From Laetmonice hystrix (Eukaryota): DNA of 64,000 nucleotides. Below are positions 1,024 to 30,982 of this stretch, piece by piece; position 1 is the stretch's first letter, and each line of letters begins with the position of its first letter. Location: NCBI GenBank assembly GCA_965235115.1, contig OZ249438.1, positions 6,510,001 to 6,574,000 of the forward strand, in the 5' to 3' direction. A program made the position numbers and the translations under genes. The notes beneath the pieces were generated by a model. The model searched no databases, was not told the origin of the DNA, and saw only the letters and a list, made by a program, of their open reading frames with translations.

Positions 1024-1201
1024 ATACAGTGAGTAATTCTTCAGAGACCACGACGGTGGACGGTATTAAACAAGACGAGATTAAGGAATTCGCTAAGCAG
1101 TTCAAGATCCGGCGGTTGTCACTTGGTTTGACGCAGACTCAGGTGGGTCAAGCACTCAGCGCCACCGAGGGGCCTAGCTACAGCCAGACAACTATCTGCC
1201 G
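1024..1201 (+). CDS. pou6: POU6-class transcription factor, exon encoding the N-terminal part of the POU-specific domain
   Basis: [42 protein letters not shown] closely follows POU6F1/F2. Acceptor tttcag at 1023; donor gtgagt at 1202, phase 2. Confidence 0.93.
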
Positions 1202-1502: not shown

Positions 1503-1717
1503 GTTTGAAAAACTGGAGGTCATGTCAAAGAGTGCACAGAAGTTGAAGCCAGTGATGGACAGCTGGATGGGTGAGGCCGAGGAAGAGTACAAGAATGGTG
1601 TTAAGAATCTCACCGACTTCATCAGCGGTGAACCATCCAAGCGCAAGAGAACGTCGTTCATGCCGCAAGAGTTGGAAGTTTTGAATGAGCATTTTGAACG
1701 GAATAAGCATCCCTCAG
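1503..1717 (+). CDS. pou6: POU6-class exon: end of POU-specific domain, linker, start of homeodomain
   Basis: FEKLEVMSKSAQKLKPVMDSW...NLTDFISGEPSKRKRTSF...HFERNKHPS. AG at 1501-1502 completes CG|G (Arg); donor gtaaga at 1718, phase 1. Confidence 0.93.
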
Positions 1718-2930
1718 GTAAGATCTGGGGCCTAGCTTTCTACATGTCCGACTGAAACTATTTGTACTGCACACTTTTTCTCCTTCATTTTGTTATTTTA
1801 TTTTAAAAAGAATCATTTGTCTGGGCATAGTCATGAAGAGGATGTGCCACTGCAGTCAGAAAGCTTCCAATTTTCCGAGTTTATTGCATTCTGCTAGATG
1901 CCAAACCTTGTGACGTAAATTAGTTAAAGCAGTGGTCTACTCCCGAATTTGCCAATTCACACTGGTTCTGTCTTATCCCAACTAAAGGGAAACATGTATT
2001 CTTACCAAATTTACCCCAAAGCCATCTATTTACTCGTGATTCTTGCGAAATGAGCAAACCTGCACCCCTTGATCGGCTCTGAAAAACACGGCACACACTT
2101 ATACATCTATACAAGTATTCCCCACACTGTAAGGTCTCTACAGATCTATGTCTTTCTTTTGGTGAGACTGCTTATAGTTATGAATACAGTGAGCTTTGTT
2201 TGGAAATTTAAAAGTTCTTAAAAGTTTACCGTGATGTTTAAAAAGGTAAATTATAATGCTATAATATTCTGAGAATATCTACTGACCTTTTTAGTTTCTG
2301 CTTCTGTAATATTTTAATGCATCTTTCGATAAAACGAGAGCTTGACAGCAAAATAGTGGAGTCTACTTTTATTTAGGGGCAATTTCTTTCTGAAAATATA
2401 TCTAAATTGGTTTTAGTTTTCAAAATGTCATAAAGTCGTATCAGTTTGGGAAAAACGGGCTAAGGAGAAAGACTTTTGTGTCGCAAGAAGACCCAGAATT
2501 GGACTCTTCTTTCTGAGGTCGGTTCTGGTGATGTTTTGAAGGTCAGAAAAGTTTGTCAGACTCTGCAGCGGTAGACAAAGCATGGAGAGACGGTCACAAA
2601 GATCACTTTGTTAACCACTGTGGTTTAAAGTTTATAGGAAAAAGAGAAAAAGAAAATTTTATAGTTAATGCTGATATCTGCACACAATGCAGGCTTGTTA
2701 TTAAAAACTTTATTTTTAATTTTTGAAGTGATTTTTTCTGAGATTGTGGTGATAAAAACCCCCGAAGGGTTATCCCAATGTCACTGGAGATCTCCTGACT
2801 AACATCACATTCTTGGGTTGGAATGAAATGGGGGGGGGGGGGTGGAAATACAGAATAGACAAATATCATCTTACTACTAGGGGACTGTGAAAGCTCTAAT
2901 ATCACAATATTTGCTTTTCATTTCTTGCAG

Positions 2931-3037
2931 GAGCTGAAATAACAGAGCTGTCAGACAAGCTGAATTATGACCGAGAGGCCATTCAAGTCTGGTTCTGCAA
3001 CAAGCGCCAAGCTGTCCAGACCACCAAAAGGCTTAAG
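2931..3037 (+). CDS. pou6: POU6-class exon: homeodomain helices 2-3
   Basis: After tttcttgcag: (G)AEITELSDKLNYDREAIQVWFCNKRQAVQTTKRLK, containing the POU WFCN motif. Candidate phase-0 donor gtatgg at 3038; without splicing the frame stops at 3079. Confidence 0.92.
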
Positions 3038-3121
3038 GTATGGCTAAGCAAAGTGTTCATGTTTACAGCCAAATTTTGATCAATTTAATGTATTTATGAC
3101 AAAAAAACAAGGTTTATTGAA

Positions 3122-3235
3122 CAGGGATGCCAATCTTCTGTGGAAGCATGGAAATCTGCATTTTTTTGTCCTTGGACCCCCTACTGCAATTTATGATTGT
3201 TTTGCTGTTTTGGTGACTTGCTGTTGGCATCCCTG
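3122..3235. mobile_element. Small MITE-like remnant
   Basis: Perfect 12-bp TIR CAGGGATGCCAA...TTGGCATCCCTG; no TSD recognised. Confidence 0.5.
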
Positions 3236-5045
3236 AATAGACCTGATTCATGATGACGTCATAACTTGGGAAAGCCCATTTTTACGGAAAGCATGCTGTG
3301 ATTGATTGAGGAATGCATAGGCAATAACTGAGCATCAATTGTGGACGTTCCCATACAGATGCCTGGCTTTGATGCTCTGAGCCGTGTTATCGGTATATCC
3401 CCGTGGTAACTTAACCCCCACCAAATTTGGTTAGAAGTAAAGATCTATAGTTCTGACCTTATCCCAAACCCCTACCCCTCCTAAAATCATATCCCTATCC
3501 TATCCCTAGCCTTAACCAGAACCCCTACTCATAAATTTGTCTATAAGTTACCTGTCAGTGGATATTCAAAAAGCCATCGACTTCAGTATTATAATGCAGC
3601 AGAGTAGATCTACCCTCCTCCCAGAACATGGAAAAATTATTGCCTATGGCACCAGATAAGTAAATGAATGGAACGCACAGTTTGGATGTTTTCCTGACCC
3701 AGCCGCCAGGCTACCGACAAGTCTTGTCACCAGTCACAAGATTTATCTTCAGGAAAGAAATCAAAACTAACAAGAGACAAGTGTGTACGTTATTGTGTTG
3801 TGTGTACATTATGTATGTTATTGTGTTTTGTTTTGTTTAACGGGCTATGGGTTGGGAGGTGTGTTTTGTGAGAATATATGTGTATCTGTAGGGGTGTCTT
3901 GTCTTGGAAAATAAAAAATATTATAAAAAAAACAAAAACAAGAGACAAGTCACTTAAAATGGCGTGACAGTTCGAAATGCAACAGTTTTTCGGCACTAGT
4001 GTAAATTAACGGTGGAATTTGGTGTGGCAATCGGTTCGGGCATAAAACAGTCAATCCCATCATGCTATACGAGGAAATTCTGTGACGTCATTATGAAATA
4101 TAGGTCTATGGAGGCCTGTACTTCCCCCAAAATATGGACGGTTTTGTCCTATTTCGTGGAAGACAAGGCCATAAATAGCCATAATTATCCCATCCCCCAA
4201 GTGGGGGATGGGATCTTGAAATTGTCTGGTTTCGTCTTCCCTATTATTATTATTATACGCGTTGTAGTTGTAGTAGGTAGTAGTTAACAATGGTCGATTT
4301 CTCAGTCGTTTCTTAAGGTATCGTAATGAAACTTGGTGGGACCCTTGCTCATGAGCATAGTAACTCATTTTTATATGCATGACGTCATATGACGTAACGT
4401 CAGAGAGTTATGACGTCATCAATAGTTGGGGGAAAATACCTTATTTCTAGAGTCCTTGAAGGAGCAGAACAAAATTTATTCATATCGGGGACCTTATCAC
4501 TTAAGTGCCTATAACTTTGTTACTACATTTGACCCCTGACCTTTAACCTTCTTGAGATGTAAGTCATATGTCAAAAAGTGACAAAATTGTTTCACGCCCC
4601 ACATTTTTGGTCAAATCGACCCCAAATTGATTTCAGGAAATCTCAATGGGGGCCTTCAATGGGGTCCGTGTGGATAAAGCGCTGTGACCTATTTTAAGGG
4701 TACCACGTGGCATTAAAGTTGGGGTCATGGCCGTTTTCAGAAACAATTGGCTGTAACTTCTAAACGGTGAAAGATGGAGCCTTGGTTACTATTGAACATG
4801 AATAGGAAGTCATATATGCTCTTTATTATATAATTTTTTTAGGTCACGTGACTATTTTTAAAAATTAGGGGGGAAAAATAAAAAAAGGGAAAAACATGCC
4901 GGGACCTCTCCACTGCGAGTCGAACACTCTTGACCATCGCCACACAATTCTGACATGTGATTACAGGATTGAACTGGTACTGATTACCAAAGGATATTTT
5001 GTAATTGCATTCAAATAGACCAATCCAAGATTTTTTAATAGGTTA

Positions 5046-5400
5046 ACTGTCTGTGACACCAAGATGGCTTCTCTAAAATCAATAGTTTTTATGCTATGGC
5101 CCCTCAAAGTTGACCCTTTTAGGTTATTTTCAATCAAAGTTCAATGATATCTCAAAACGATTAAATATATGAATGTCTGGTTTTCTCCATGGGGGATAGG
5201 ATACAAAATTGAACCATTTGACCCGAATTTTAAAAATCCAAGATGGCGGCCAAGTTGACCTAATTTGCGATTTCAGCACCATTGGATTGGGTAATAGGTC
5301 AACTGTCTGTGACACCAAGATGGCTTCCCTAAAATCAATAGTTTCAATGCTATGGCCCCTTAAAGTTGGCCTCTTTAGGCCATTATCAATGTCGGGTTTT
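5046..5400. repeat. Local duplication, period about 256 bp
   Basis: AACTGTCTGTGACACCAAGATGGCTTC..AAAATCAATAGTTT..ATGCTATGGCCCCT occurs near 5046 and near 5301. Confidence 0.6.
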
Positions 5401-6419
5401 AACCATTGGAGTTAGGATGGAAAACTGCACCCATTTTCCCCGAATTTGACAAATCCAAGATGGCGGCCAAGTCATGTATGCTCTTTCAAGTGACACCAAG
5501 ATTTATGACATAGCGTCATGTCATACGTCACACTAGCATTAATCTCCGCCCACTGCACATATTTGGTGAGCACTGAGAGATAAATCGCCAATGAGTGGTG
5601 GGAATCTGAGAGGTGGCTTGGCACGACAGTTTCCCAGTGTGCACTGCATCAGGTTTCATATCGTGTTGACAAGTGATGATAACCAGGGGAATGGGATCCC
5701 TGTATTGCTTCAGCAATCAGTGTTTCTAGTTAACCATGAAATGGTGGCCGGCTTGTCCCTAGTGCTCCACACACCATTCGATTGCATTTGTTGTCCTCAA
5801 GCTGGCAGTATTCATCATGTGAAGAGCACTTCCTGTATGCAAATGAGGCCGAAGTGGCCACCAGAATGAGGTTCAGTAGTTTCTGTATGGTTCGGTTACT
5901 CTGCCACTGTGTCCGAGCGCCAGTATTGATGCTGTAAGGTTGATATGACAAGGGACAGGGGTGACTTCAAACGTAGGTGACTGGTATAATATTGCACCAG
6001 GTGGCGCAAATGAGCATGACACTGAAACACGAGGGTCAGCTTTGGCTGGATACTGCATTCCCTCACTTCCTTGGATGAAACCTAGGCGAAATTATTATAA
6101 CATTTTACTGGGCACTGCCTCAAGACTGTATAGCCGAGTCCTTCACCCATTGTGGTCAAGTCCCTTTAGTAATGGTAAGCACCATGTTACTTTATTACTT
6201 GATGACTTGTTAGCCCCCAACCCCTCCAGGGGGCTTCTCCTTTACACTTCGTCTGTACGTCCATATGGCACGTCTGTCCCTCTGTCCGTCCGTCCGTCCA
6301 TCCGTCCGTGGACAGCGATATCTCAAAAACACGTGATCCAAACCTTTTCATATTTTAACACAAGATCACCTGTGTATCACTGAGAAATATCTTTTGAAAT
6401 TGCATTCTTTATGCTTTTC

Positions 6420-6845
6420 ACTATGTCTGCACAACTATATGTCTGGCATGATTGTTTTGACTCGATGCAGGATTGGTCATTCTAGATTAACCCACGTGTT
6501 TTTATTGAAGGGGGAGCCACCTCCAGAATGTCATGGCTGTCAATGTCCTTTGAGACTGAAGCATCTTTTACTTGAGTGTGGTGATTTTACTCTGATCAGA
6601 CAACGGTTTTATAATGAGACAAGTCTTAAGGATTTTTTAGCAATATCAGACCAGGAATGATTTTAGAGTTTTTGTCAGAGGCTGGACTTCTGACTCTTTT
6701 ATGGTGTGTTGGTGGTGTTCCCGTTGGGACCCGGGATAAAATAGGTTCCTTTGGTTTTATGGTCTTTTAACTCTGTTTTCGCCGTGAAGATGGCCCCGGA
6801 TGCCGACTAGGCACAAAACCACCACTACTCACTCACTCACTCACT
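6420..6845 (+). mobile_element. 3' fragment of an I-group-like non-LTR retrotransposon
   Basis: LTRCRIGHSRLTH...PPECHGC...LKHLLLEC is the C-terminal CCHC motif. 3' UTR ends in an (ACTC)n tail; the same 3' end recurs at 44595-44716. Confidence 0.8.
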
Positions 6846-7055
6846 GGCATGATTTTTAGGTTGCATGGGATGTATAAAGGAGATTGTTGGGTTCTTCTCC
6901 GCGCATACACACTTTGTAATCTCTCATAGGGAAGAAAGCAAAGCTGCTGAATCCTCAATGGCTTTTATGTCATCCTCATTTAGAGTAACAATGTCCTTAA
7001 AGTTTTTTCTTACTTCTGGACTCATGTACAGGCAGCAATAACTGCAGGTTGCAGT

Positions 7056-7300
7056 TCAAGGAATTTCTTTGGATCTATGAAAGAAACCCACAATTTTGAA
7101 AACCTGAGCACAAACACGAATTATCTGTTTTACTTGAAGCCGGTTCTGGGTTGCCAAGTTCAGGGTATGGGCAAAGCAGCCCAAATGTAACGCTATGCCT
7201 GCCTCTCTTGCTGCTATCCCCATATTTGATGCATTGTTTCTCAGCCTTGACATTCCCTTCTATGTCCCACTCTTTCATACTCTCCTTGAGCACTTGCCCT
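7056..7300 (-). pseudogene. hAT (ZBED-like) transposase remnant
   Basis: Frameshifted LKESMKEWDI.. / NASNM..AR..HLGCFAHTLNL..VGFFHRS, containing the hAT CxxH motif. Confidence 0.75.
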
Positions 7301-8441
7301 ATATATTGGGTGGGCCCAAAAAATTTGGAACACTCTTCCCAATGTCATGATGTTTTGCACATGATATCATCTGGTTATTTGGAGCCTGTGGTACAAATTT
7401 CACATAAATCGGTCAATATGTCTACAAATAGGGCCATTTTTAAAAATTCGTGTCAAAAATTGCAGTGCCGGACCAGGGTCATTGGCGTGATGCCGCACGT
7501 CTTTTAAGCGGGAAACTGCCCTAAAAAACTGAGTCCCGTCACGTTGAACGACCCAGTTTCCCTGGCGTGCCTCAATTAAGGCAGGGTTGTTGCCACTGTG
7601 TCTGAAATGACGTGACGTCAAATGACATTATGTATGAAATGCCCCCTGCCAAAAACTGGTGGCCGGTCCACACTTAAACGCCATGGATTACACCATTTGT
7701 GATTCTCTGTCTGGAAAAGTCTGTAAAGGTCGCAAACAAAAATTCGCCGAGAATGAACTAAAGAAGAAAATTCAGGAAAAGTGGGAGGGAATTACTCTAG
7801 AAGAAGGAAGTCAATCGGGATATTCAAAAAGAGACTAAAGGCTGTGTGTGAACACTGAAGGGGTCACATCGGTCACCTTTGAAACCAACTGAAATAGGTA
7901 GGTGAGAGTTACACGGCTCTCCGGCATTGCATTTTTCGACATATCCTGTTTGATTTGTTCCACATAAAGAGTTTTTGGCCTAGCGGTCTGAAATTTTCAC
8001 CACAAAATGCTATTAACCATATAACATGATACCCTAAATATCAGTCACAAACTATGCAAACTAGAAGCTATACTCAAGTAAAGAGTGTTCCAGACACAGC
8101 GGGACCAACTCTGCTGAGGATGTCTGGTCCAGCATTGCAATTTTTGAAATGCAGTTTTTAAAATGACCCTATTTTTAGATGTTTTGACCTCAAAGATTAA
8201 ACGCATTAGATTTCACACTATCTTTGGGGATATTTTCCAATATCTTTTCACAATAGTCCTTTGCATCCTACGGCTGCATAATACATTTGAATTTTTTGTT
8301 CCATTTCCTTAATGTGTAAATACACAGGAAGTTGTGGAAACACAAACACTGGTTGACACCTCTGCTTTAGAAACTTCCTGTCTATAATTTAGTATAGGTC
8401 TAGGTTATTGCCTGTTGATAATGAAGTTTTCTTGTTTTTAG

Positions 8442-10661
8442 ACCTCAACTGCAATAACAGCTAGAAAGGGGAGTCAAACGCCAGGGAGGCAACAGTATAA
8501 TATTAAAGATGATCATCGCCTTCTCAAACCAACCCAGGCAAAACAACAGCAAATATCTTCAAGGGAAATGACCACCTCTATTGTATCTACATCCACTGGA
8601 AGAAGCTCTGCTAAAACGTATGAAAAATTTATAGAAGACATTCCAGGAATCAGCTGCGAAGGAATAAGTATGGTAGAGCGAATCAGTCTCTATCAGGCGT
8701 ACCTAGAGGATCTGGATTCTACCTCCAAATGGAAATCTTCAGTCACACAGGTAGCTAAGGATAGAAGATCAGGCTCCATGGGAAAAAGTAGTACAGTCAG
8801 TAAAACAGTGAATGTTCAACTTGGGACTGTCGGTGAACTGCGTGAACCATTACCTGCAACTGTAGAAAGAGGGCGTGGTGAACGGCAACCTGTCGGTGAA
8901 CTACGTGAACCATTACATGCAAGTGTAGAGGGAAGGCATAGTGAACGGCAACCTGTCAGTAATCTGTGTGAACCATTACGTGCAAGTGTAGAGGGAAGGC
9001 ATAGTGAACGGCAACCTGTCGGTGAACTGTGTGAACCATTACGTGCAAGTGTAGAGGGAAGGCATAGTGAACGGCAACCTGTCGGTGAACTGCGTGAACC
9101 ATTACGTGCAAGTGTAGAGGGAAGGCATAGTGAACGGCAACCTGTCGGTGAACTGTGTGAACCATTACGTGCAAGTGTAGAGGGAAGGCGTAGTGAACAG
9201 CAACCTGTTGGTGAACTGCGTGAACCATTACGTGCAAGTGTAGAAAGAGGGCGTGGTGAACGGCAACCTGTCGGTAATCTGTGTGAACCATTACGTGCAA
9301 GTGTAGAGGGAAGGCATAGTGAACGGCAACCTGTCGGTAATCTGTGTGAACCATTACGTGCAAGTGTAGAGGGAAGGCATAGTGAACGGCAACCTGTCGG
9401 TAATCTGTGTGAACCATTACGTGCAAGTGTAGAGGGAAGGCCTGGTGGACGGCAACCTGTCGGTGAACTGTGTGAACCATTACGTGCAAGTGTAGAAAGA
9501 GGGCGTGGTGAACGGCAACCTGTCGGTAATCTGTGTGAACCATTACGTGCAAGTGTAGAGGGAAGGCATAGTGAACGGCAACCTGTCGGTGAACTGCGTG
9601 AACCATTACGTGCAAGTGTAGAAAGAGGGCGTGGTGAACGGCAACCTGTCGGTAATCTGTGTGAACCATTACGTGCAAGTGTAGAGGGAAGGCGTGGTGA
9701 ACGGCAACCTGTCGGTAATCTGTGTGAACCATCACGTGCAAGTGTAGAGGGAAGGCGTGGTGAACGGCAACCTGTCGGTAATCTGTGTGAACCATTACGT
9801 GCAAGTGTAGAGGGAAGGCATAGTGAACGGCAACCTGTCGGTAATCTGTGTGAACCATTACGTGCAAGTGTAGAGGGAAGGCCTGGTGGACGGCAACCTG
9901 TCGGTGAACTGTGTGAACCATTACGTGCAAGTGTAGAGGGAAGGCATAGTGGACGGCAACCTGTCGGTGAACTGTGTGAACCATTACGTGCAAGTGTAGA
10001 AAGAGGGCGTGGTGAACAGCAAACGAGAGTTGATGAGGATAATAGTGACGGAAACCCTGGTGACAAGGATGGAAGTGAAGATGATGGTATTGAAGTGGAT
10101 TCAGATTTGGGTCTCCCTGAAGATGATGAGAGTGACTCGACAGGCAGGTCACTTATTTTGATTGGTACAGAGGAATGGACTGTGTTTAAATCTCCTGATA
10201 TAGATAGTAGTTCAAAGACTTTTAGTAAAAATCTTCCCTCAGAAGCCAAATCACATGAAAAACAAAGTTGCAAAAGGAAAGCTTATAGTGTCAAAAGACC
10301 TAAAAGTTCAATGGACCTTGCCCCAAAAGGCTTTACTTCACACACAGAAAAACCTGCGGAACAATCTGCCCCCAAACTACCAAGCATGCATTCTGTTATA
10401 AGTTTAAGTTCAGACAGTGAATCGGAGGCTGTAGATGATGACTTGAGCATTGTCTCATGTGACTTACCTAAGGAGCGTCCCAAATGCTGCCGGTGTGGAA
10501 GGTTGAAGCTGCTGTTTAAACCATTCAAGTGTGATTCAACAAATACTTCCAGTATTAACAACACAGGACATCAGTCATGTAATAGTCATGACACACCTCA
10601 AAGGCACGCACACCAGAACCCGCTAAAACATGGCACGGTGATCGACCTTACCATTGATTAA
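8442..10661 (+). CDS. Large putative terminal exon (740 codons): 21-aa tandem repeats, acidic/Ser region, SIM-like motifs; probable C-terminal extension of the POU6 protein
   Basis: Acceptor cttgtttttag at 8441 is phase 0 and in frame with ORF 8568-10661 (126 nt upstream). The frame is closed by TAG exactly at the acceptor. Phase matches the POU donor at 3038. ATTAAA near 10677. Confidence 0.65.
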   Translation, partial: TSTAITARKGSQTPGRQQYNIKDDHRLLKPTQAKQQQISSREMTTSIVSTSTGRSSAKTYEKFIEDIPGISCEGISMVERISLYQAYLEDLDSTSKWKSSVTQVAKDRRSGSMGKSSTVSKTVNVQLGTVGELREPLPATVERGRGERQPVGELREPLHASVEGRHSERQPVSNLCEPLRASVEGRHSERQPVGELCEPLRASVEGRHSERQPVGELREPLRASVEGRHSERQPVGELCEPLRASVEGRRSEQQPVGELREPLRASVERGRGERQPVGNLCEPLRASVEGRHSERQPVGNLCEPLRASVEGRHSERQPVGNLCEPLRASVEGRPGGRQPVGELCEPLRASVERGRGERQPVGNLCEPLRASVEGRHSERQPVGELREPLRASVERGRGERQPVGNLCEPLRASVEGRRGERQPVGNLCEPSRASVEGRRGERQPVGNLCEPLRASVEGRHSERQPVGNLCEPLRASVEGRPGGRQPVGELCEPLRASVEGRHSGRQPVGELCEPLRASVERGRGEQQTRVDEDNSDGNPGDKDGSEDDGIEVDSDLGLPEDDESDSTGRSLILIGTEEWTVFKSPDIDSSSKTFSKNLPSEAKSHEKQSCKRKAYSVKRPKSSMDLAPKGFTSHTEKPAEQSAPKLPSMHSVISLSSDSESEAVDDDLSIVSCDLPKERPKCCRCGRLKLLFKPFKCDSTNTSSINNTGHQSCNSHDTPQRHAHQNPLKHGTVIDLTID
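8829..10025 (+). repeat. Coding tandem repeat, 19 x 63 bp (VGELCEPLRASVEGRHSERQP)
   Basis: Units counted from the translation; all are 63 bp with no frameshift. Confidence 0.95.
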
Positions 10662-11418: not shown

Positions 11419-13778
11419 ATTTAAAGTGCATGTTATTTGAAGCCTCCAAACAGAAGGGCCTAGTTTGACTGTCCAAATCCGTTCGTACATTCATCTGTAT
11501 GTACAATATTTGTAAATCGAGTAATTTGTCAGAATTGTAAGATTAAGCTTACCTGAAACTTACAATCATTCACTGTTAGGCGGCCATCTTGGATATAAAC
11601 TCATTTGGAGGAATAACTGAGACAATCTGGATTTCTTTCAAACTTGGTGCAGACAAGAGCCATATGAAGGTCAACAATATGGCAACATGGTACTGATGTA
11701 ATGGTAGCCATATTTGTTTTTTGACTCTGAAAATAGAACTGTTTTGACTTGTATCTTGAAAGTGGCCCATGATAACGCAGTAGTTACTAGTCCATCAAGG
11801 TCGCAAATATTTTCAAATTGGATGACATTATCTTGGTGCATTGTGAAGAACCCAAACTCAGGATTTTGATGGAATTGACTCTTTAATACACAATGCAGTA
11901 GTCACGTTAGAGGGAGACACCTGCCTTGACTAGATGTGAAATCTTCAACTCCCCCGCTGCTCCTCGCACTGGAGAAAACTGGAAGGATTGAAATAGGTCT
12001 ATAATTATTAAATACCCTAAGATTATCATTTTTGAATAAGGGAACAACGTTTGCTTTTTTCCATTGAACAGGAATATATGATTATTATCATTTTGTGGTG
12101 AAAGTTTCAGACATAGGTCAAAATATCTTTTAGTGCCAATCTAATGTCGAAAACTGCCATGCTGGAGAGCAAAGTAAGTTTAACTGACCTTTTTCCGTTG
12201 AAAGGTGATCGATATGGCCTCCATTCTGTTCACACACAGCCCTAAGTCTCTTTTTGAATGACCCGATTGACTTCATGTTTGTAAACCTTTTCAGGGAGGG
12301 AATCTCAGTCTGGTGTGAACCCATCCTTTATCCAGGTAACAACCTGCAATACTGTTTTGTCATCAACACTGAACATAATGGCTCAAGTCAGTGAACTCCC
12401 GTGAAATTCCAGGTAATATATAGATATAGAATCCCCCATGGCCGTGATACGGCCATGGGGGTCCTTCCACTGGACTATTCGGCAGGCTACTAATTTATTG
12501 CCAACATAATGCTTAAAATTTCAGATACAACCTGCTCTGTGTGAAATTTTCTGATGAAATGTGTCAAAACAGAGTCTGACACAAAGATTGACACTGAGGT
12601 CAGAGAGATGTCGCATCATTCAGACACAGTGGAACCAACCCTGCCTAACACATGCAGCATCATGTTAATTACCCTGTTCTAACTTTGCAGTTTTTTAAAG
12701 GCAGTTTTTAAAGTGGCACTCATTTGAGACATTTTCACCTATTTATCTGAAATTTGTACCACACGGCCCAATTAACTGTAAAATATCATGTGCAAAATAT
12801 GATGTCGGTATAAAAATGATAGAAGTTAGTCAAGATTAGAGTGTTCCAGTTTGGTGGGGGATGGTGATGCGTTATGGATGCGCCACTCAGCGAGTTTCTT
12901 AGGGTTCATGAAGTTATAGTGTTTTAGCAAAAAAAAAACTATCCCAGATTGTTGTCCTTTCTATTTTTGTATTTGAAAGTAGTTAAAATATTCCAGCTGA
13001 ATTTAGAATTTAGAATTTTAGAAAATATTAGAATTTTAGAAAATATCCACTAAATATATACTAACAAAATAAAACAAATTAAAAAATAAAAAATGTTTTG
13101 CCTGAATCCACAAGAAACATGGTGGGAAGTAAAAAAAAAAAACTTTTTCTGTCGCTTTTGTTCACTAGCATAGCCGACATCCTTAGTGCTGCCGCTCATG
13201 CAAATCTCTGTTTTTGCAGCAGCTCTAGTCAAAGAAGTTATGTGTATGGATGCCTTGGCTTTAGATTATAATGTTAATTGGTTTTGTATCCATCAAAGTA
13301 TATAGTAACATATTTTAACTATCTATACTGCCATTCATATTGTTCATTGACCCATTCTTTGTAATAAGTACATTACAAAAGCAGTAAAAAATCAGTTTTT
13401 AGTGTGTTTGAGCGTCGTTTTTTCTGCCCATGTTTGTACCCATGTTTGTACATTTAATGTAATGATATGAATATAATATTCCAGTTTAAAAAATATATAA
13501 CATCTACATATCCCAATGAATCATTTTATAATATATTTTGCTTTTTTTAGCTTTTAGCTTGAGGCTGACCTGTAAGGTGATGTTTGAGTATGATTTTATC
13601 ACTTGTCCAGAGCCAGGGGTCATTACGTGAGCACAGATCACATAGTTGACATTGTCTTCCAGTAGTTGCAAAGAAAAACCTCCATTATAGCAGAACCCGC
13701 AGGTCAGGCACGTAATTAAGCCTCGTTTAAAGTCCATGTAAAAAGTAAATAATTTTTGGAAATACTCTGCTCCCCATT

Positions 13779-28792: not shown

Positions 28793-29402
28793 TACTCTTG
28801 CACACTCCTCCCAAGGAAATCTAGGCCAGAGAGGCAACCTAGGGAGGTAAGTGTCACCCCCCTGAAAAATATGCTGGGCCACAGTTACGTCCATATCCCA
28901 AAATGAAGTTCCTCTCAAGGAAATATTACACACAAATTACCAATAATTTCAGAAGTTAAGAAAATCGGATGGCCGATCGGATGTAAATCGGCTTAGTGGA
29001 ATTCAGCCTTAATAGGCCTACATTTAAATTCAGAGACTAGACAAAAATGTTGGAGAAAACCAGGTCACCTTATTTGACACGAGACTACATAAGTGCTGCG
29101 TGCGAACTGCGAATTAAATGAATAATGTCTTGTGAAGGAAACGGGCAACTCATAAGGAAATAATCTATAGTCTGTACTACAGTTGTTTATAGTCCAGTCC
29201 TTGGACAAGAGCTATATTCGATGCCTTTTTTAGCTTTGTCACTAGGTCCTGTTTGGCTTTTTCATAGAGACTTGGGATAACTTTACCACTAAAGTATCAA
29301 CAGCTTCACACCCGAAGTTAAAAAAATGGATGAACCAAGATGTCAGCCACTATGGCGAACGTGCTGGACCATCATCTCAAAGACGCAGTAGATTTCTGAC
29401 TA

Positions 29403-30982
29403 ACTTTGGGAATATATTCAAATATCTTTTCACGGTGGTCCTTTCCATCCTATGGCTGCATAATACATTTGAATTTTTTGTTCCTGTTCCATAATGTGTA
29501 AATATACACAGGAAAGTTCTGGAAACACAAACACTGGTTGACACCTCTGCTTTAGAAACTTCCTGTCTGTCATTTAGTATAGGTCTAGGTTATTGCGTGT
29601 TGTTAATGAAGTTTTCCTGTTTTTAGATCTCAACTGCAACATCAGCTAGAAAGGGCAGTCAAATGGCAGGAAAGCAACAGTATAATATTAAAGATGATCA
29701 TCGCCTTCTCAAACCAAACCAGGCAAAACAACAGCAAATATCTTCAAGGGAAAAGACAACCTCTATTGTATCTACATCCACTGGAAGAAGCTCTGCTAAA
29801 ACGTATGAAAAATTTATAGAAGACATTCCAGGGAGCAGCTGCGAAGGAATAAGTATGGTAGAGCGAATCAGTCTCTATCAGGCGTACCTAGAGGATCTGG
29901 ATTCTACCTCCAAATGGAAATCTTCAGTCACACAGGTAGCTAAGGATAGAAGATCAGGCTCCATGAGAAAAAGTAGTACAGTCGGTAAAACAGTGAATGT
30001 TCAACCTGTTGGTGAACTGTGTAAACCATTGCGTGCAAGTGTAGAGGGAAAGCGTGGTAAAAGACAACTTGTCGGTGAACTGCGTGAACCACTCCATGAA
30101 AGTGTAGAGGGAAGGCATGGTGAACAGCAAACGAGAGTTGATGAGGATAATAGTGATGGAAACCCTGGTGACAAGGATGGAAGTTCAGATTTGGGTCTCC
30201 CTGAAGATGATGAGAGTGCCTCGACAGGCAGCTCACTTATTTTGATTGGTACAGAGAGAGACTGGAAGGAATGGACTGCATTTAAACCTCCTGATATAGA
30301 TAGTAGTTCAAAGACTTTTAGTAAAAATGTTCCCTCAGAAGTCAAATCACATGAAAAACAAAGTTGCAAAAGGAAACAATCTGCCCCCAAACTACCAAGC
30401 ATGCATTCTGTTATACATTTAGCTTCAGACAGTGAATCGGAGGCGGGAGATGATGACTTGAGCATTGTCTCATGTGACTTACCTAAGAAGCGTCCCAAAT
30501 GCTGCCGGTGTGGAAGGTTGAAGAGGCTGTTTAAACCATTCAAGTGTGATTCAACAAATACTTCCAGTATTAACAACACAGGACATCAGTCATGTAATAG
30601 TCATGACACACCTCAAAGGCACGCACACCAGAACCCGCTAAAACATGGCACGGTGATCGACCTTACCATTGATTAATGACGCCAGTATATCATTAAATTG
30701 AAGAAGTGCTATTCTTTTATGGTATTAGGTATTATATTTATTCACTTATGAAATACTCTGATGAAAATTTTGTGTTTCAATGATTCTTCGGCGCAATTCA
30801 TGTGGTAAATGACACCAAGATCTTGCTGGTAAAGTAACATGCATCATGCCTTACATAAAATGTAAGCCACAATTTTATAAAGTTTAATCCATGAAAAAAA
30901 TGAAGGTAGTGTTATTATGGTGTGTTAAAAACATATATAATCTGGAGAGATGTTGCATGCAGTGCACATGAAGGCATGAAGG
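29403..30982 (+). repeat. Segmental duplicate of about 8222-10967 (intron end, terminal exon, 3' UTR)
   Basis: Collinear similarity from CTTTGGG(G/A)ATAT to GCATGAAGG; 3' UTRs nearly identical. Confidence 0.92.
29627..30676 (+). CDS. Second intact copy of the putative POU6 terminal exon (350 codons, 2 repeat units)
   Basis: Acceptor ctgtttttag at 29626, phase 0, in frame with ORF 29663-30676; same C-terminus HGTVIDLTID*. Confidence 0.6.
   Translation: MSTATSARKGSQMAGKQQYNIKDDHRLLKPNQAKQQQISSREKTTSIVSTSTGRSSAKTYEKFIEDIPGSSCEGISMVERISLYQAYLEDLDSTSKWKSSVTQVAKDRRSGSMRKSSTVGKTVNVQPVGELCKPLRASVEGKRGKRQLVGELREPLHESVEGRHGEQQTRVDEDNSDGNPGDKDGSSDLGLPEDDESASTGSSLILIGTERDWKEWTAFKPPDIDSSSKTFSKNVPSEVKSHEKQSCKRKQSAPKLPSMHSVIHLASDSESEAGDDDLSIVSCDLPKKRPKCCRCGRLKRLFKPFKCDSTNTSSINNTGHQSCNSHDTPQRHAHQNPLKHGTVIDLTID

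What the first reader, a model, noticed from the sequence alone, without database searches (positions are those of the whole stretch)
2931..10661. POU6 homeodomain apparently spliced to a novel 740-aa repeat-rich tail
Seen: a phase-0 GT donor right after ..TKRLK (3038) and a phase-0 acceptor at 8442 that opens a 2.2-kb frame with no start context of its own (TAG at the acceptor). The joined protein would have 19 x 21-aa repeats rich in Arg, Glu and Cys, then an acidic Ser-rich region. Known: POU6 proteins normally end shortly after the homeodomain. Inference: a lineage-specific POU6 with a long, length-variable disordered C-terminus.
Basis: partly seen in the sequence, partly recalled or inferred. 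Interest (0 to 1): 0.7.

Follow-up and report, generated by a model that had tools for sequence, protein, structure and literature searches.

The report
POU6 duplicate joined to borrowed tail exon
A recently duplicated POU6 transcription-factor gene in this annelid-like animal has lost its normal stop and is spliced onward, most likely into a copied last exon of an unrelated, fast-evolving gene, so it is probably a young chimeric gene, although the junction itself was only inferred.

Summary
The sequence features are real. AAG|GTATGG follows ..TKRLK at 3037/3038. A strong phase-0 acceptor sits at 8441/8442. The frame has 739 codons and holds 19 exact 63-bp repeats. Two details need correcting: an in-frame ATG with G at -3 lies at 8568, and Cys is only 3.5% of the repeat.

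The tail is not a POU6 invention. It is one of three copies of a terminal-type exon on this chromosome: A here, B at 29627-30676 and C about 470 kb away, with 19, 2 and 11 repeats. One foreign homologue exists, without repeats and without a POU domain. The family shares a short helix, three SUMO-interaction-like motifs, a CCxCG motif and a ..VIDLTxD end.

A canonical POU6 on contig C12 stops seven codons after KKL in the same exon. The window's copy is its diverged duplicate.

One run (X4) behaves like RNA. It holds an exon2-exon3 contig with no read-through past 3037 and 72 further letters. Its laid piece ends at 3035, and the only spare depth outside repeats is at 8400-8599. Both point to a 3037-to-8442 joint, but that joint was not listed.

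My odds are 0.55 for the fusion and 0.25 for an independent tail gene. The scan's other note (s1-334737) saw copy B.

The parts
1024..1201 (+). POU6 paralogue, exon holding the first two thirds of the POU-specific domain (acceptor cag at 1021-1023, donor GTGAGT at 1202).
   Evidence: Pfam Pou PF00157, E 3e-18. Best solved relative is POU6F1 3D1N, E 2e-17. 93% aa identity to the C12 paralogue. Sequence read.
1503..1717 (+). POU6 paralogue, exon holding the end of the POU-specific domain, the linker and the first half of the homeodomain (ends ..CCCTCAG|GTAAGA).
   Evidence: Pfam Pou and Homeodomain. Best solved relative is POU6F1 3D1N, E 2e-21, against 2e-4 for other POU classes. Sequence read. 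Its last 85 nt lie in RNA-like contig rec23.
2931..3037 (+). POU6 paralogue, exon holding the second half of the homeodomain (..VWFCNKRQAVQTTKRLK), ending in phase 0.
   Evidence: Pfam Homeodomain, E 1.5e-7. X4 contig rec23 matches 2928-3035 at 100%, with 82 and 72 further letters on either side.
3038..3043 (+). 5' splice site GTATGG, used in RNA. Without it the frame would stop at 3077-3079.
   Evidence: No depth of run X4 on 3036-3199 beyond rec23. The frame was read.
8166..8315 (+). Transcribed stretch that ends just before GTAAAT at 8316. It may be the tail copy's own non-coding 5' exon. Its role is unexplained.
   Evidence: X4 contig rec29, 150 nt at 100%. Stops in all three frames. Only about 85% like copy B.
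8426..8441 (+). Pyrimidine tract and AG acceptor. It is conserved in copies B and C and, as '..LPCFQ', in the foreign homologue.
8442..10661 (+). Tail exon, copy A: 739 codons plus the stop. It is a terminal-type coding exon of a small family.
   Evidence: A-identical RNA-like depth lies at 8400-8532.
8568..8570 (+). In-frame ATG (G at -3). This would be the start codon if the tail were translated as a gene of its own.
   Evidence: The ATG is kept in copy C. In copy B it is lost and replaced by an ATG 30 codons upstream.
8827..10022 (+). 19 tandem units of 63 bp (21 aa, VGELCEPLRASVEGRHSERQP).
   Evidence: Copy C has 10.6 units and copy B 1.9 units.
10023..10658 (+). Conserved C-terminal part: an acidic stretch, three SUMO-interaction-like motifs (SVISLSSDSESE, DDDLSIVSCD, GTVIDLTID), and CCRCG.
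   Evidence: Alignment with copies B, C and P0001. Motif scan.
29627..30676 (+). Tail exon, copy B: 349 codons, about 2 repeat units, same acceptor. DNA homology with copy A runs from 29383 to 30982.

Best explanation
The window holds a young chimeric gene. A segmental duplicate of the animal's POU6 gene lost the ancestral stop just after the homeodomain and gained a 5' splice site (AAG|GTATGG) there. The parent, or at least the canonical copy, lies on contig C12.

About 5.4 kb downstream lies copy A of a duplicated terminal coding exon from an unrelated, fast-evolving family. That exon brings its own strong phase-0 acceptor. Splicing 3037 to 8442 would give a POU6 DNA-binding protein with a 739-residue, largely disordered tail. 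The tail has a short conserved helix, 19 Arg/Glu/Gly/Pro-rich 21-aa repeats, an acidic stretch and three SUMO-interaction-like motifs ending in ..VIDLTID.

Inferred function: the tail would tether the POU6 domain to SUMO-modified chromatin partners, with the repeat array adding valency or spacing.

Shown: both halves exist separately elsewhere, the donor is used, and A-type exon sequence is transcribed. Inferred: the junction itself, translation of the chimera, and SUMO binding.
For: Donor use. Run X4 has no depth on the unique intron bins and has a repeat-to-unique depth ratio about 1000 times lower than the DNA runs, so it behaves like RNA. Its contig rec23 (262 nt) matches 2928-3035 only. 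The left end runs 3 nt into the intron because exon 2 also ends in CAG, so the aligner extends as far as letters match. The right end nevertheless stops at 3035, not 3037.

Inferred joint. That is what the tool's left-placed joints do when the two letters AG also fit before the partner exon (compare rec13, 'both' = 2). The 72 remaining letters must then lie inside 2800-8799, after an AG. Depth arithmetic leaves spare X4 depth outside repeats only in 8400-8599. There no differences from copy A are reported at the 13 positions that tell A from B and C. The inferred end, 8511, equals 8481 + 30, and 8481 is a position where A differs from both B and C.

Phases and origin. Both splice sites are phase 0. 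The tail frame is open from the acceptor in all three copies and in P0001, as expected of an exon that needs an upstream coding exon. The C12 paralogue and the foreign POU6 fragments end ..ALKNTIKKL + 5 aa + stop within the same exon. DNA homology between the C3 and C12 genes includes introns and upstream exons.
Against: - The joint 3037 to 8442 is not in the printed tables; 20 joints and 12,417 pieces were not shown. My reading rests on the tool's conventions and on depth sums.
- Contigs collapse variants, so copy-specific statements are weak.
- Another X4 contig (8166-8315) ends exactly before GTAAAT, 126 nt upstream of the acceptor, which suggests the tail may have its own 5' exon.
- Copy C and P0001 are not next to POU exons.
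- An in-frame ATG with a good context exists at 8568.
- dN/dS among the copies is about 1.
- One sample and one small run; no run is on record as RNA.
Confidence: 0.55

Rival explanations
1. Two separate genes. The tail copy A is its own transcription unit, with a non-coding 5' exon ending at 8315, a 126-nt intron, and translation from ATG 8568 giving 697 aa. POU6 exon 3 is spliced to some other, unidentified downstream exon.
For: X4 contig rec29 covers 8166-8315 at 100% and stops right before GTAAAT, at a depth like that of the POU6 exon (13.9 against 16.8). The ATG at 8568 has G at -3. Copy B lost that ATG but has another in frame. The family exists without POU exons at copy C and in P0001.
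Against: It does not explain why rec23's laid piece ends at 3035. No locus-specific X4 depth marks another exon in 3038-8165. If 8315 joined 8442 at that depth, rec23's tail should break 30 nt into the exon, not at 70. The stretch 8201-8315 is less conserved in copy B than the supposed intron. The frame is open from the acceptor in four sequences, 88 codons in P0001.
Confidence: 0.25
2. POU6 exon 3 is spliced to a tail-family exon, but to copy B (29627, two repeats), or to both as alternative last exons, rather than to copy A.
For: Copy B keeps the same acceptor and phase. A B-type tail is 89% like A, so it could have been aligned, had the AG assigned to it, and then been dropped by the 95% rule. 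The scan's other note, s1-334737, proposes alternative last exons.
Against: The acceptor of A comes first, 21 kb earlier. If A and B were both used, the contig would break one letter after the joint, since A starts AC and B starts AT, yet 72 letters follow. A-identical depth is present at 8400-8532.
Confidence: 0.1
3. The chimeric transcript is splicing noise. Copies A and B are decaying duplicates of the terminal exon of the gene at copy C, and no functional POU6-tail protein is made.
For: dN/dS is about 1.0-1.3 among the copies in the C-terminal 210 codons and in the first 42 codons. The POU6 copy itself evolves fast towards its 3' end: 93%, 73% and 71% aa identity for its three exons.
Against: There are no stops in 739, 349 or 589 codons at 5-12% divergence, and five independent indels are all in frame. 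The motifs are conserved down to a homologue of 31% identity. The POU6 copy keeps WFCNKRQ and is expressed.
Confidence: 0.1

Closest known systems
POU class 6 factors (human POU6F1/Brn-5, PDB 3D1N; POU6F2; Drosophila pdm3)
   Same: It has a bipartite POU-specific domain plus a POU homeodomain with WFCNKRQ. Among solved structures the best match by far is POU6F1. The exon breaks are the same as in the canonical paralogue on C12.
   Different: Canonical POU6 ends a few residues after the homeodomain, within the same exon. Here that stop is gone and the exon ends in a used splice donor. Gold et al. 2014 (PMC4245813) infer a single POU6 in invertebrate bilaterians; this genome has two.
Chimeric genes made by exon capture or exon shuffling, such as host-transposase fusion transcription factors that arise through a captured splice acceptor (from my own knowledge, not checked here)
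   Same: A duplicated piece that brings its own 3' splice site and open frame lands downstream of a gene and is spliced onto it in phase.
   Different: The captured piece is not a transposase or a DNA-binding domain. It is the disordered, motif-bearing last exon of a cellular gene family. The DNA-binding part is the recipient.
Multi-SIM SUMO readers (the PIAS 'VIDLT' motif, RNF4; from my own knowledge)
   Same: There are three short hydrophobic cores (VISL, SIV, VIDL) flanked by Ser/Asp/Glu runs. They are conserved between the copies and P0001.
   Different: No RING, SP-RING or other Pfam domain is present. Binding to SUMO was not tested. I found no named family by Pfam, by the Atlas, or by a scan of 1.84 billion proteins.

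Membership tests
POU class 6 transcription factors | POU-specific domain | tested here: met
   PF00157, E 3e-18 (exon 1024-1201) and 9e-5 (exon 1503-1717).
POU class 6 transcription factors | POU-type homeodomain with WFCN(R/K)RQ in helix 3 | tested here: met
   PF00046 on both halves. VWFCNKRQ was read.
POU class 6 transcription factors | Closer to class 6 than to the other POU classes | tested here: met
   POU6F1 3D1N scores E 2e-21 against 2e-4 for the next class, and 2e-17 against 5e-12. No tree was built.
POU class 6 transcription factors | Protein ends shortly after the homeodomain | tested here: not met
   The canonical stop is absent and the donor at 3038 is used in RNA-like contig rec23. 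The feature is met by the C12 paralogue. This is a usual trait of the class, not part of its definition.
Chimeric (fusion) gene | Both parts exist as separate genes elsewhere | tested here: met
   Canonical POU6 on C12. Tail copy C has no POU exon within 17 kb, and P0001 is a foreign homologue.
Chimeric (fusion) gene | A transcript that spans the junction | tested here: inconclusive
   Inferred from the piece ending at 3035, the depth sums and the length of the contig's tail. The joint itself is not in the printed rows.
Chimeric (fusion) gene | The reading frame continues across the junction | tested here: met
   Phase 0 on both sides, reading ..TKRLK|TSTAITARK...
SUMO-interaction-motif (SIM) proteins | Hydrophobic core [VIL]x[VIL][VIL] or [VIL][VIL]x[VIL] next to acidic or Ser residues | tested here: met
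   Three such sites are conserved in copies A, B, C and P0001. The pattern is short and common, so this is weak.
SUMO-interaction-motif (SIM) proteins | Binding to SUMO | not testable with these tools
   SUMO of this genome is split into exons, so no unaltered chain could be given to complex prediction.

The most novel reading that the evidence does not exclude
The tail exon is a self-sufficient 3' cassette (acceptor, open frame, SUMO-interaction-like motifs, a repeat array of changing length, its own 3' end). It has been copied at least three times along this chromosome and is spliced onto whatever gene lies upstream. At copy C that would be an 810-codon exon 11 kb upstream with its own 22-aa repeats. 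At copy A it would be a POU6 duplicate, giving a POU-family factor with a built-in multivalent SUMO-reading tail.
Probability: 0.2. Interest if true: 0.65.

Novelty: new variant of a known kind. Interest (0 to 1): 0.5.

Why it matters
POU6 is usually a single, conservative gene in invertebrates and ends right after its homeodomain. A second copy that has swapped its stop codon for a splice donor and picked up a foreign, repeat-bearing tail would be a clear, datable case of a transcription factor gaining a new effector part by exon capture. Both parents are still present in the same genome for comparison. The three tail copies, with 2, 11 and 19 repeats, also offer a natural series for asking what repeat number does. 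If the two halves turn out to be separate genes, what remains is an ordinary POU6 duplicate next to a small orphan gene family.

Tried and rejected
- **RNA runs.** None is on record for this stretch. The single read-laying run gave contigs only, and the rows that would show the joint were not printed.
- **Spliced fragments in the protein collections.**
  - The exon-3 query found only canonical foreign POU6 ends, P0003 and P0004.
  - The tail's N-terminal and C-terminal queries found nothing.
  - An exact look-up of copy B found nothing.
- **Foreign homologue.** The contig of P0001 could not be read.
- **Family searches.** Pfam on the tail gave no hit. Pfam on 41 open frames upstream of copy C gave no hit. 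The Atlas gave no usable hit.
- **Structure.** A single-sequence fold of copy B was low-confidence (mean pLDDT 42.6), with only a helix over SMVERISLYQAYLEDL. This fits disorder but proves little.
- **Exon 3 joining the 8166-8315 stretch.** Rejected: the depth of bin 8000-8199 is fully used by rec29.
- **Copy-specific expression read from contig variants.** Abandoned: DNA contigs of one sample show mosaic patterns, so the contigs collapse variants.
- **Copy B's ATG loss and gain as evidence for an own start codon.** Rejected: the pattern is equally likely under both models.
- **Complex prediction with SUMO.** Not sent: SUMO here is split into exons.
Full report
**What is in the sequence**

Three exons of a POU gene lie at 1024-1201, 1503-1717 and 2931-3037 on the + strand. 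Pfam finds the POU-specific domain and the homeodomain across them. Among solved structures the best match by a wide margin is human POU6F1 (3D1N): E 2e-21 against 2e-4 for the next class on the second exon, and 2e-17 against 5e-12 on the first.

The third exon ends ..VWFCNKRQAVQTTKRLK at 3037 and is followed by GTATGG. Without splicing the frame would stop at 3077-3079.

At 8440-8441 a long pyrimidine tract ends in AG. From 8442 a frame of 739 codons runs to the stop at 10659-10661. It holds 19.0 units of 63 bp at 8827-10022, with 92% matches and no indels. Each unit codes 21 aa, VGELCEPLRASVEGRHSERQP.

- An in-frame ATG with G at -3 lies at 8568.
- Cys is only 3.5% of the repeat. Arg, Glu, Gly and Pro dominate.

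**The tail belongs to its own small family**

It holds exactly three copies of the tail exon, all on the + strand of contig C3:
- Copy A is the one in the finding.
- Copy B lies at window 29627-30676, with 349 open codons and 1.9 repeat units.
- Copy C lies at C3:6987420-6989138, about 470 kb away, with 589 open codons and 10.6 units.

The A/B homology runs from 241 nt before the acceptor to about 300 nt past the stop. The A/C homology starts only 54 nt before the acceptor. All three copies keep the acceptor and are open from it.

A scan of 1.84 billion representative proteins found one true relative, P0001 (395 aa, E 1e-14, 31% identity). It has no repeats and no POU domain. Its frame also reads through a '..LPCFQ' pyrimidine tract, then stays open for 88 codons before the first Met.

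Conserved between species are:
- YEKFIED..SSC.G.SMVERISLYQAYLE
- an acidic stretch
- S.I..S.E.E followed by DDDL...CD.PK..P.CC.CG
- the C-terminal HG.VIDLT.D

The three short hydrophobic cores with Ser/Asp/Glu flanks look like SUMO-interaction motifs. That reading is mine and untested.

Among the three copies dN/dS is about 1. Yet five independent indels are all in frame and none of the copies has a stop. The frame is therefore kept while the residues drift. A single-sequence fold gives low confidence, with only a helix over the conserved N-terminal motif.

**A second, canonical POU6 exists**

On contig C12 a paralogue shares the same exon breaks. Its aa identity to the window's copy is 93%, 73% and 71% for the three exons. 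It ends ..RQALKNTIKKLTTQTH-stop inside the last exon. Two foreign POU6 fragments end the same way.

DNA homology between the two loci covers introns and upstream exons. This is a fairly recent whole-gene duplication. Gold et al. 2014 (PMC4245813) infer one POU6 in invertebrate bilaterians. In the window's copy the sequence after KRLK no longer aligns cleanly, the old stop is gone, and a donor stands there.

**RNA evidence**

No run is on record as RNA. Of the four runs from the one sample, X1-X3 cover introns evenly at a depth of about 50 and are DNA.

X4 has no depth on the unique intron bins. Its repeat bins run 50-550, against 1e5-7e5 in the DNA runs, so it behaves like RNA.

Its contig rec23 (262 nt, depth 16.8) matches 2928-3035 at 100%, with 82 letters before and 72 after. 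The bins 2800-3199 hold nothing else of X4. Exon 3 is therefore spliced on both sides, and nothing reads through 3038.

- **Left end.** It reaches 2928 because exon 2 ends in CAG like the intron, so the aligner extends as far as letters match.
- **Right end.** It stops at 3035 although AG follows. In this tool, joints are placed leftmost, and letters that fit both sides go to the right-hand piece (rec13, 'both' = 2). The simplest reading is that the AG was given to a second piece that starts on an intronic AG inside the stretch.
- **Depth sums.** They leave room for 72 letters at depth 16.8 only in repeat bins or in 8400-8599. A repeat would break such a contig within 30 nt. In 8400-8599, 5476 depth-letters are unaccounted for, and no difference from copy A is reported at the positions that separate A from B and C.
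- **Contig end.** Placed at 8440-8511, the contig would end 30 nt after 8481, a position where A differs from both other copies.

I take this as indirect support for 3037|8442. The row itself was not printed.

**What speaks against the join**

X4 contig rec29 covers 8166-8315 at 100% and stops, with one unmatched letter, right before GTAAAT at 8316. That is 126 nt upstream of the acceptor. It has stops in all frames and could be a non-coding 5' exon of an independent tail gene translated from ATG 8568.

Two things weaken that idea. A join 8315|8442 at that depth should cut rec23 30 nt into the exon. And this stretch is less conserved in copy B than the supposed intron. I cannot explain rec29.

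Copy C is transcribed: rec30 carries exactly its six differences from A. It has no POU exon within 17 kb upstream. The family therefore does not need POU6.

About 11 kb upstream of copy C lies an 810-codon open exon. It has its own 22-aa repeat and a possible phase-0 GC donor. It may be the real upstream part of the parent gene, which would make A and B copies of a last exon.

**Verdict**

- Most likely (0.55): a young chimeric gene, a POU6 duplicate spliced to a captured copy of a foreign last exon.
- Next (0.25): two separate genes.
- Smaller shares go to a join with copy B and to non-functional splicing.

The kind of event (duplication, stop loss, exon capture) is known. The product, a POU6 with a long repeat-bearing tail that may read SUMO, would be a new variant.

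Noticed in passing
L013:3970-6399 (G000:C3:6973970-6976399, + strand), 11 kb upstream of tail copy C: An 810-codon open exon, single copy in the genome, with no Pfam or Atlas hit. It is Lys/Arg/Ser-rich and has two PxW..L.KDI.TG...GS motifs and 13 tandem 22-aa units (TGAGPPPPGSRGRGRQASHCVR). A phase-0 CAG|GCAAGT (GC donor) lies at 6369/6370, ten codons before its stop. It may be the upstream part of the gene whose last exon is copy C.
   Followed up: partly
window 8166-8315: A contig of the RNA-like run lies here at 100% and ends exactly before GTAAAT, 126 nt upstream of the tail exon's acceptor. It has stops in all frames. Its role is unexplained.
   Followed up: partly
L025:4362-6919 (G000:C12, about 21388362-21390919): A canonical POU6 paralogue with the usual stop just after the homeodomain. 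Homology to the window's copy includes introns and exons up to 2.5 kb upstream of the window's start.
   Followed up: yes
window 8442-8490: The first 50 nt of the tail exon differ by 16-18% between copies A, B and C. That is more than the intron just before (about 6%) and the rest of the exon (2.7%). All ten A-C changes there are non-synonymous.
   Followed up: partly
window 7807-8023 and 12075-12274; 7346-7503 and 12647-12804: Two pairs of inverted repeats (about 75% alike) flank tail copy A. The left arms lie in DNA of very high copy number (contig depth 3,000-37,000 against about 50), so they are probably copies of a small transposable element in opposite orientation.
   Followed up: no
window 6400-6800: The most abundant repeat of the stretch, with summed contig depth of 4e5-7e5 in the DNA runs. 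It overlaps an open frame with a LINE-type C-terminal Cys motif (..ECHGCQCPLRLKHLLLEC..).
   Followed up: no
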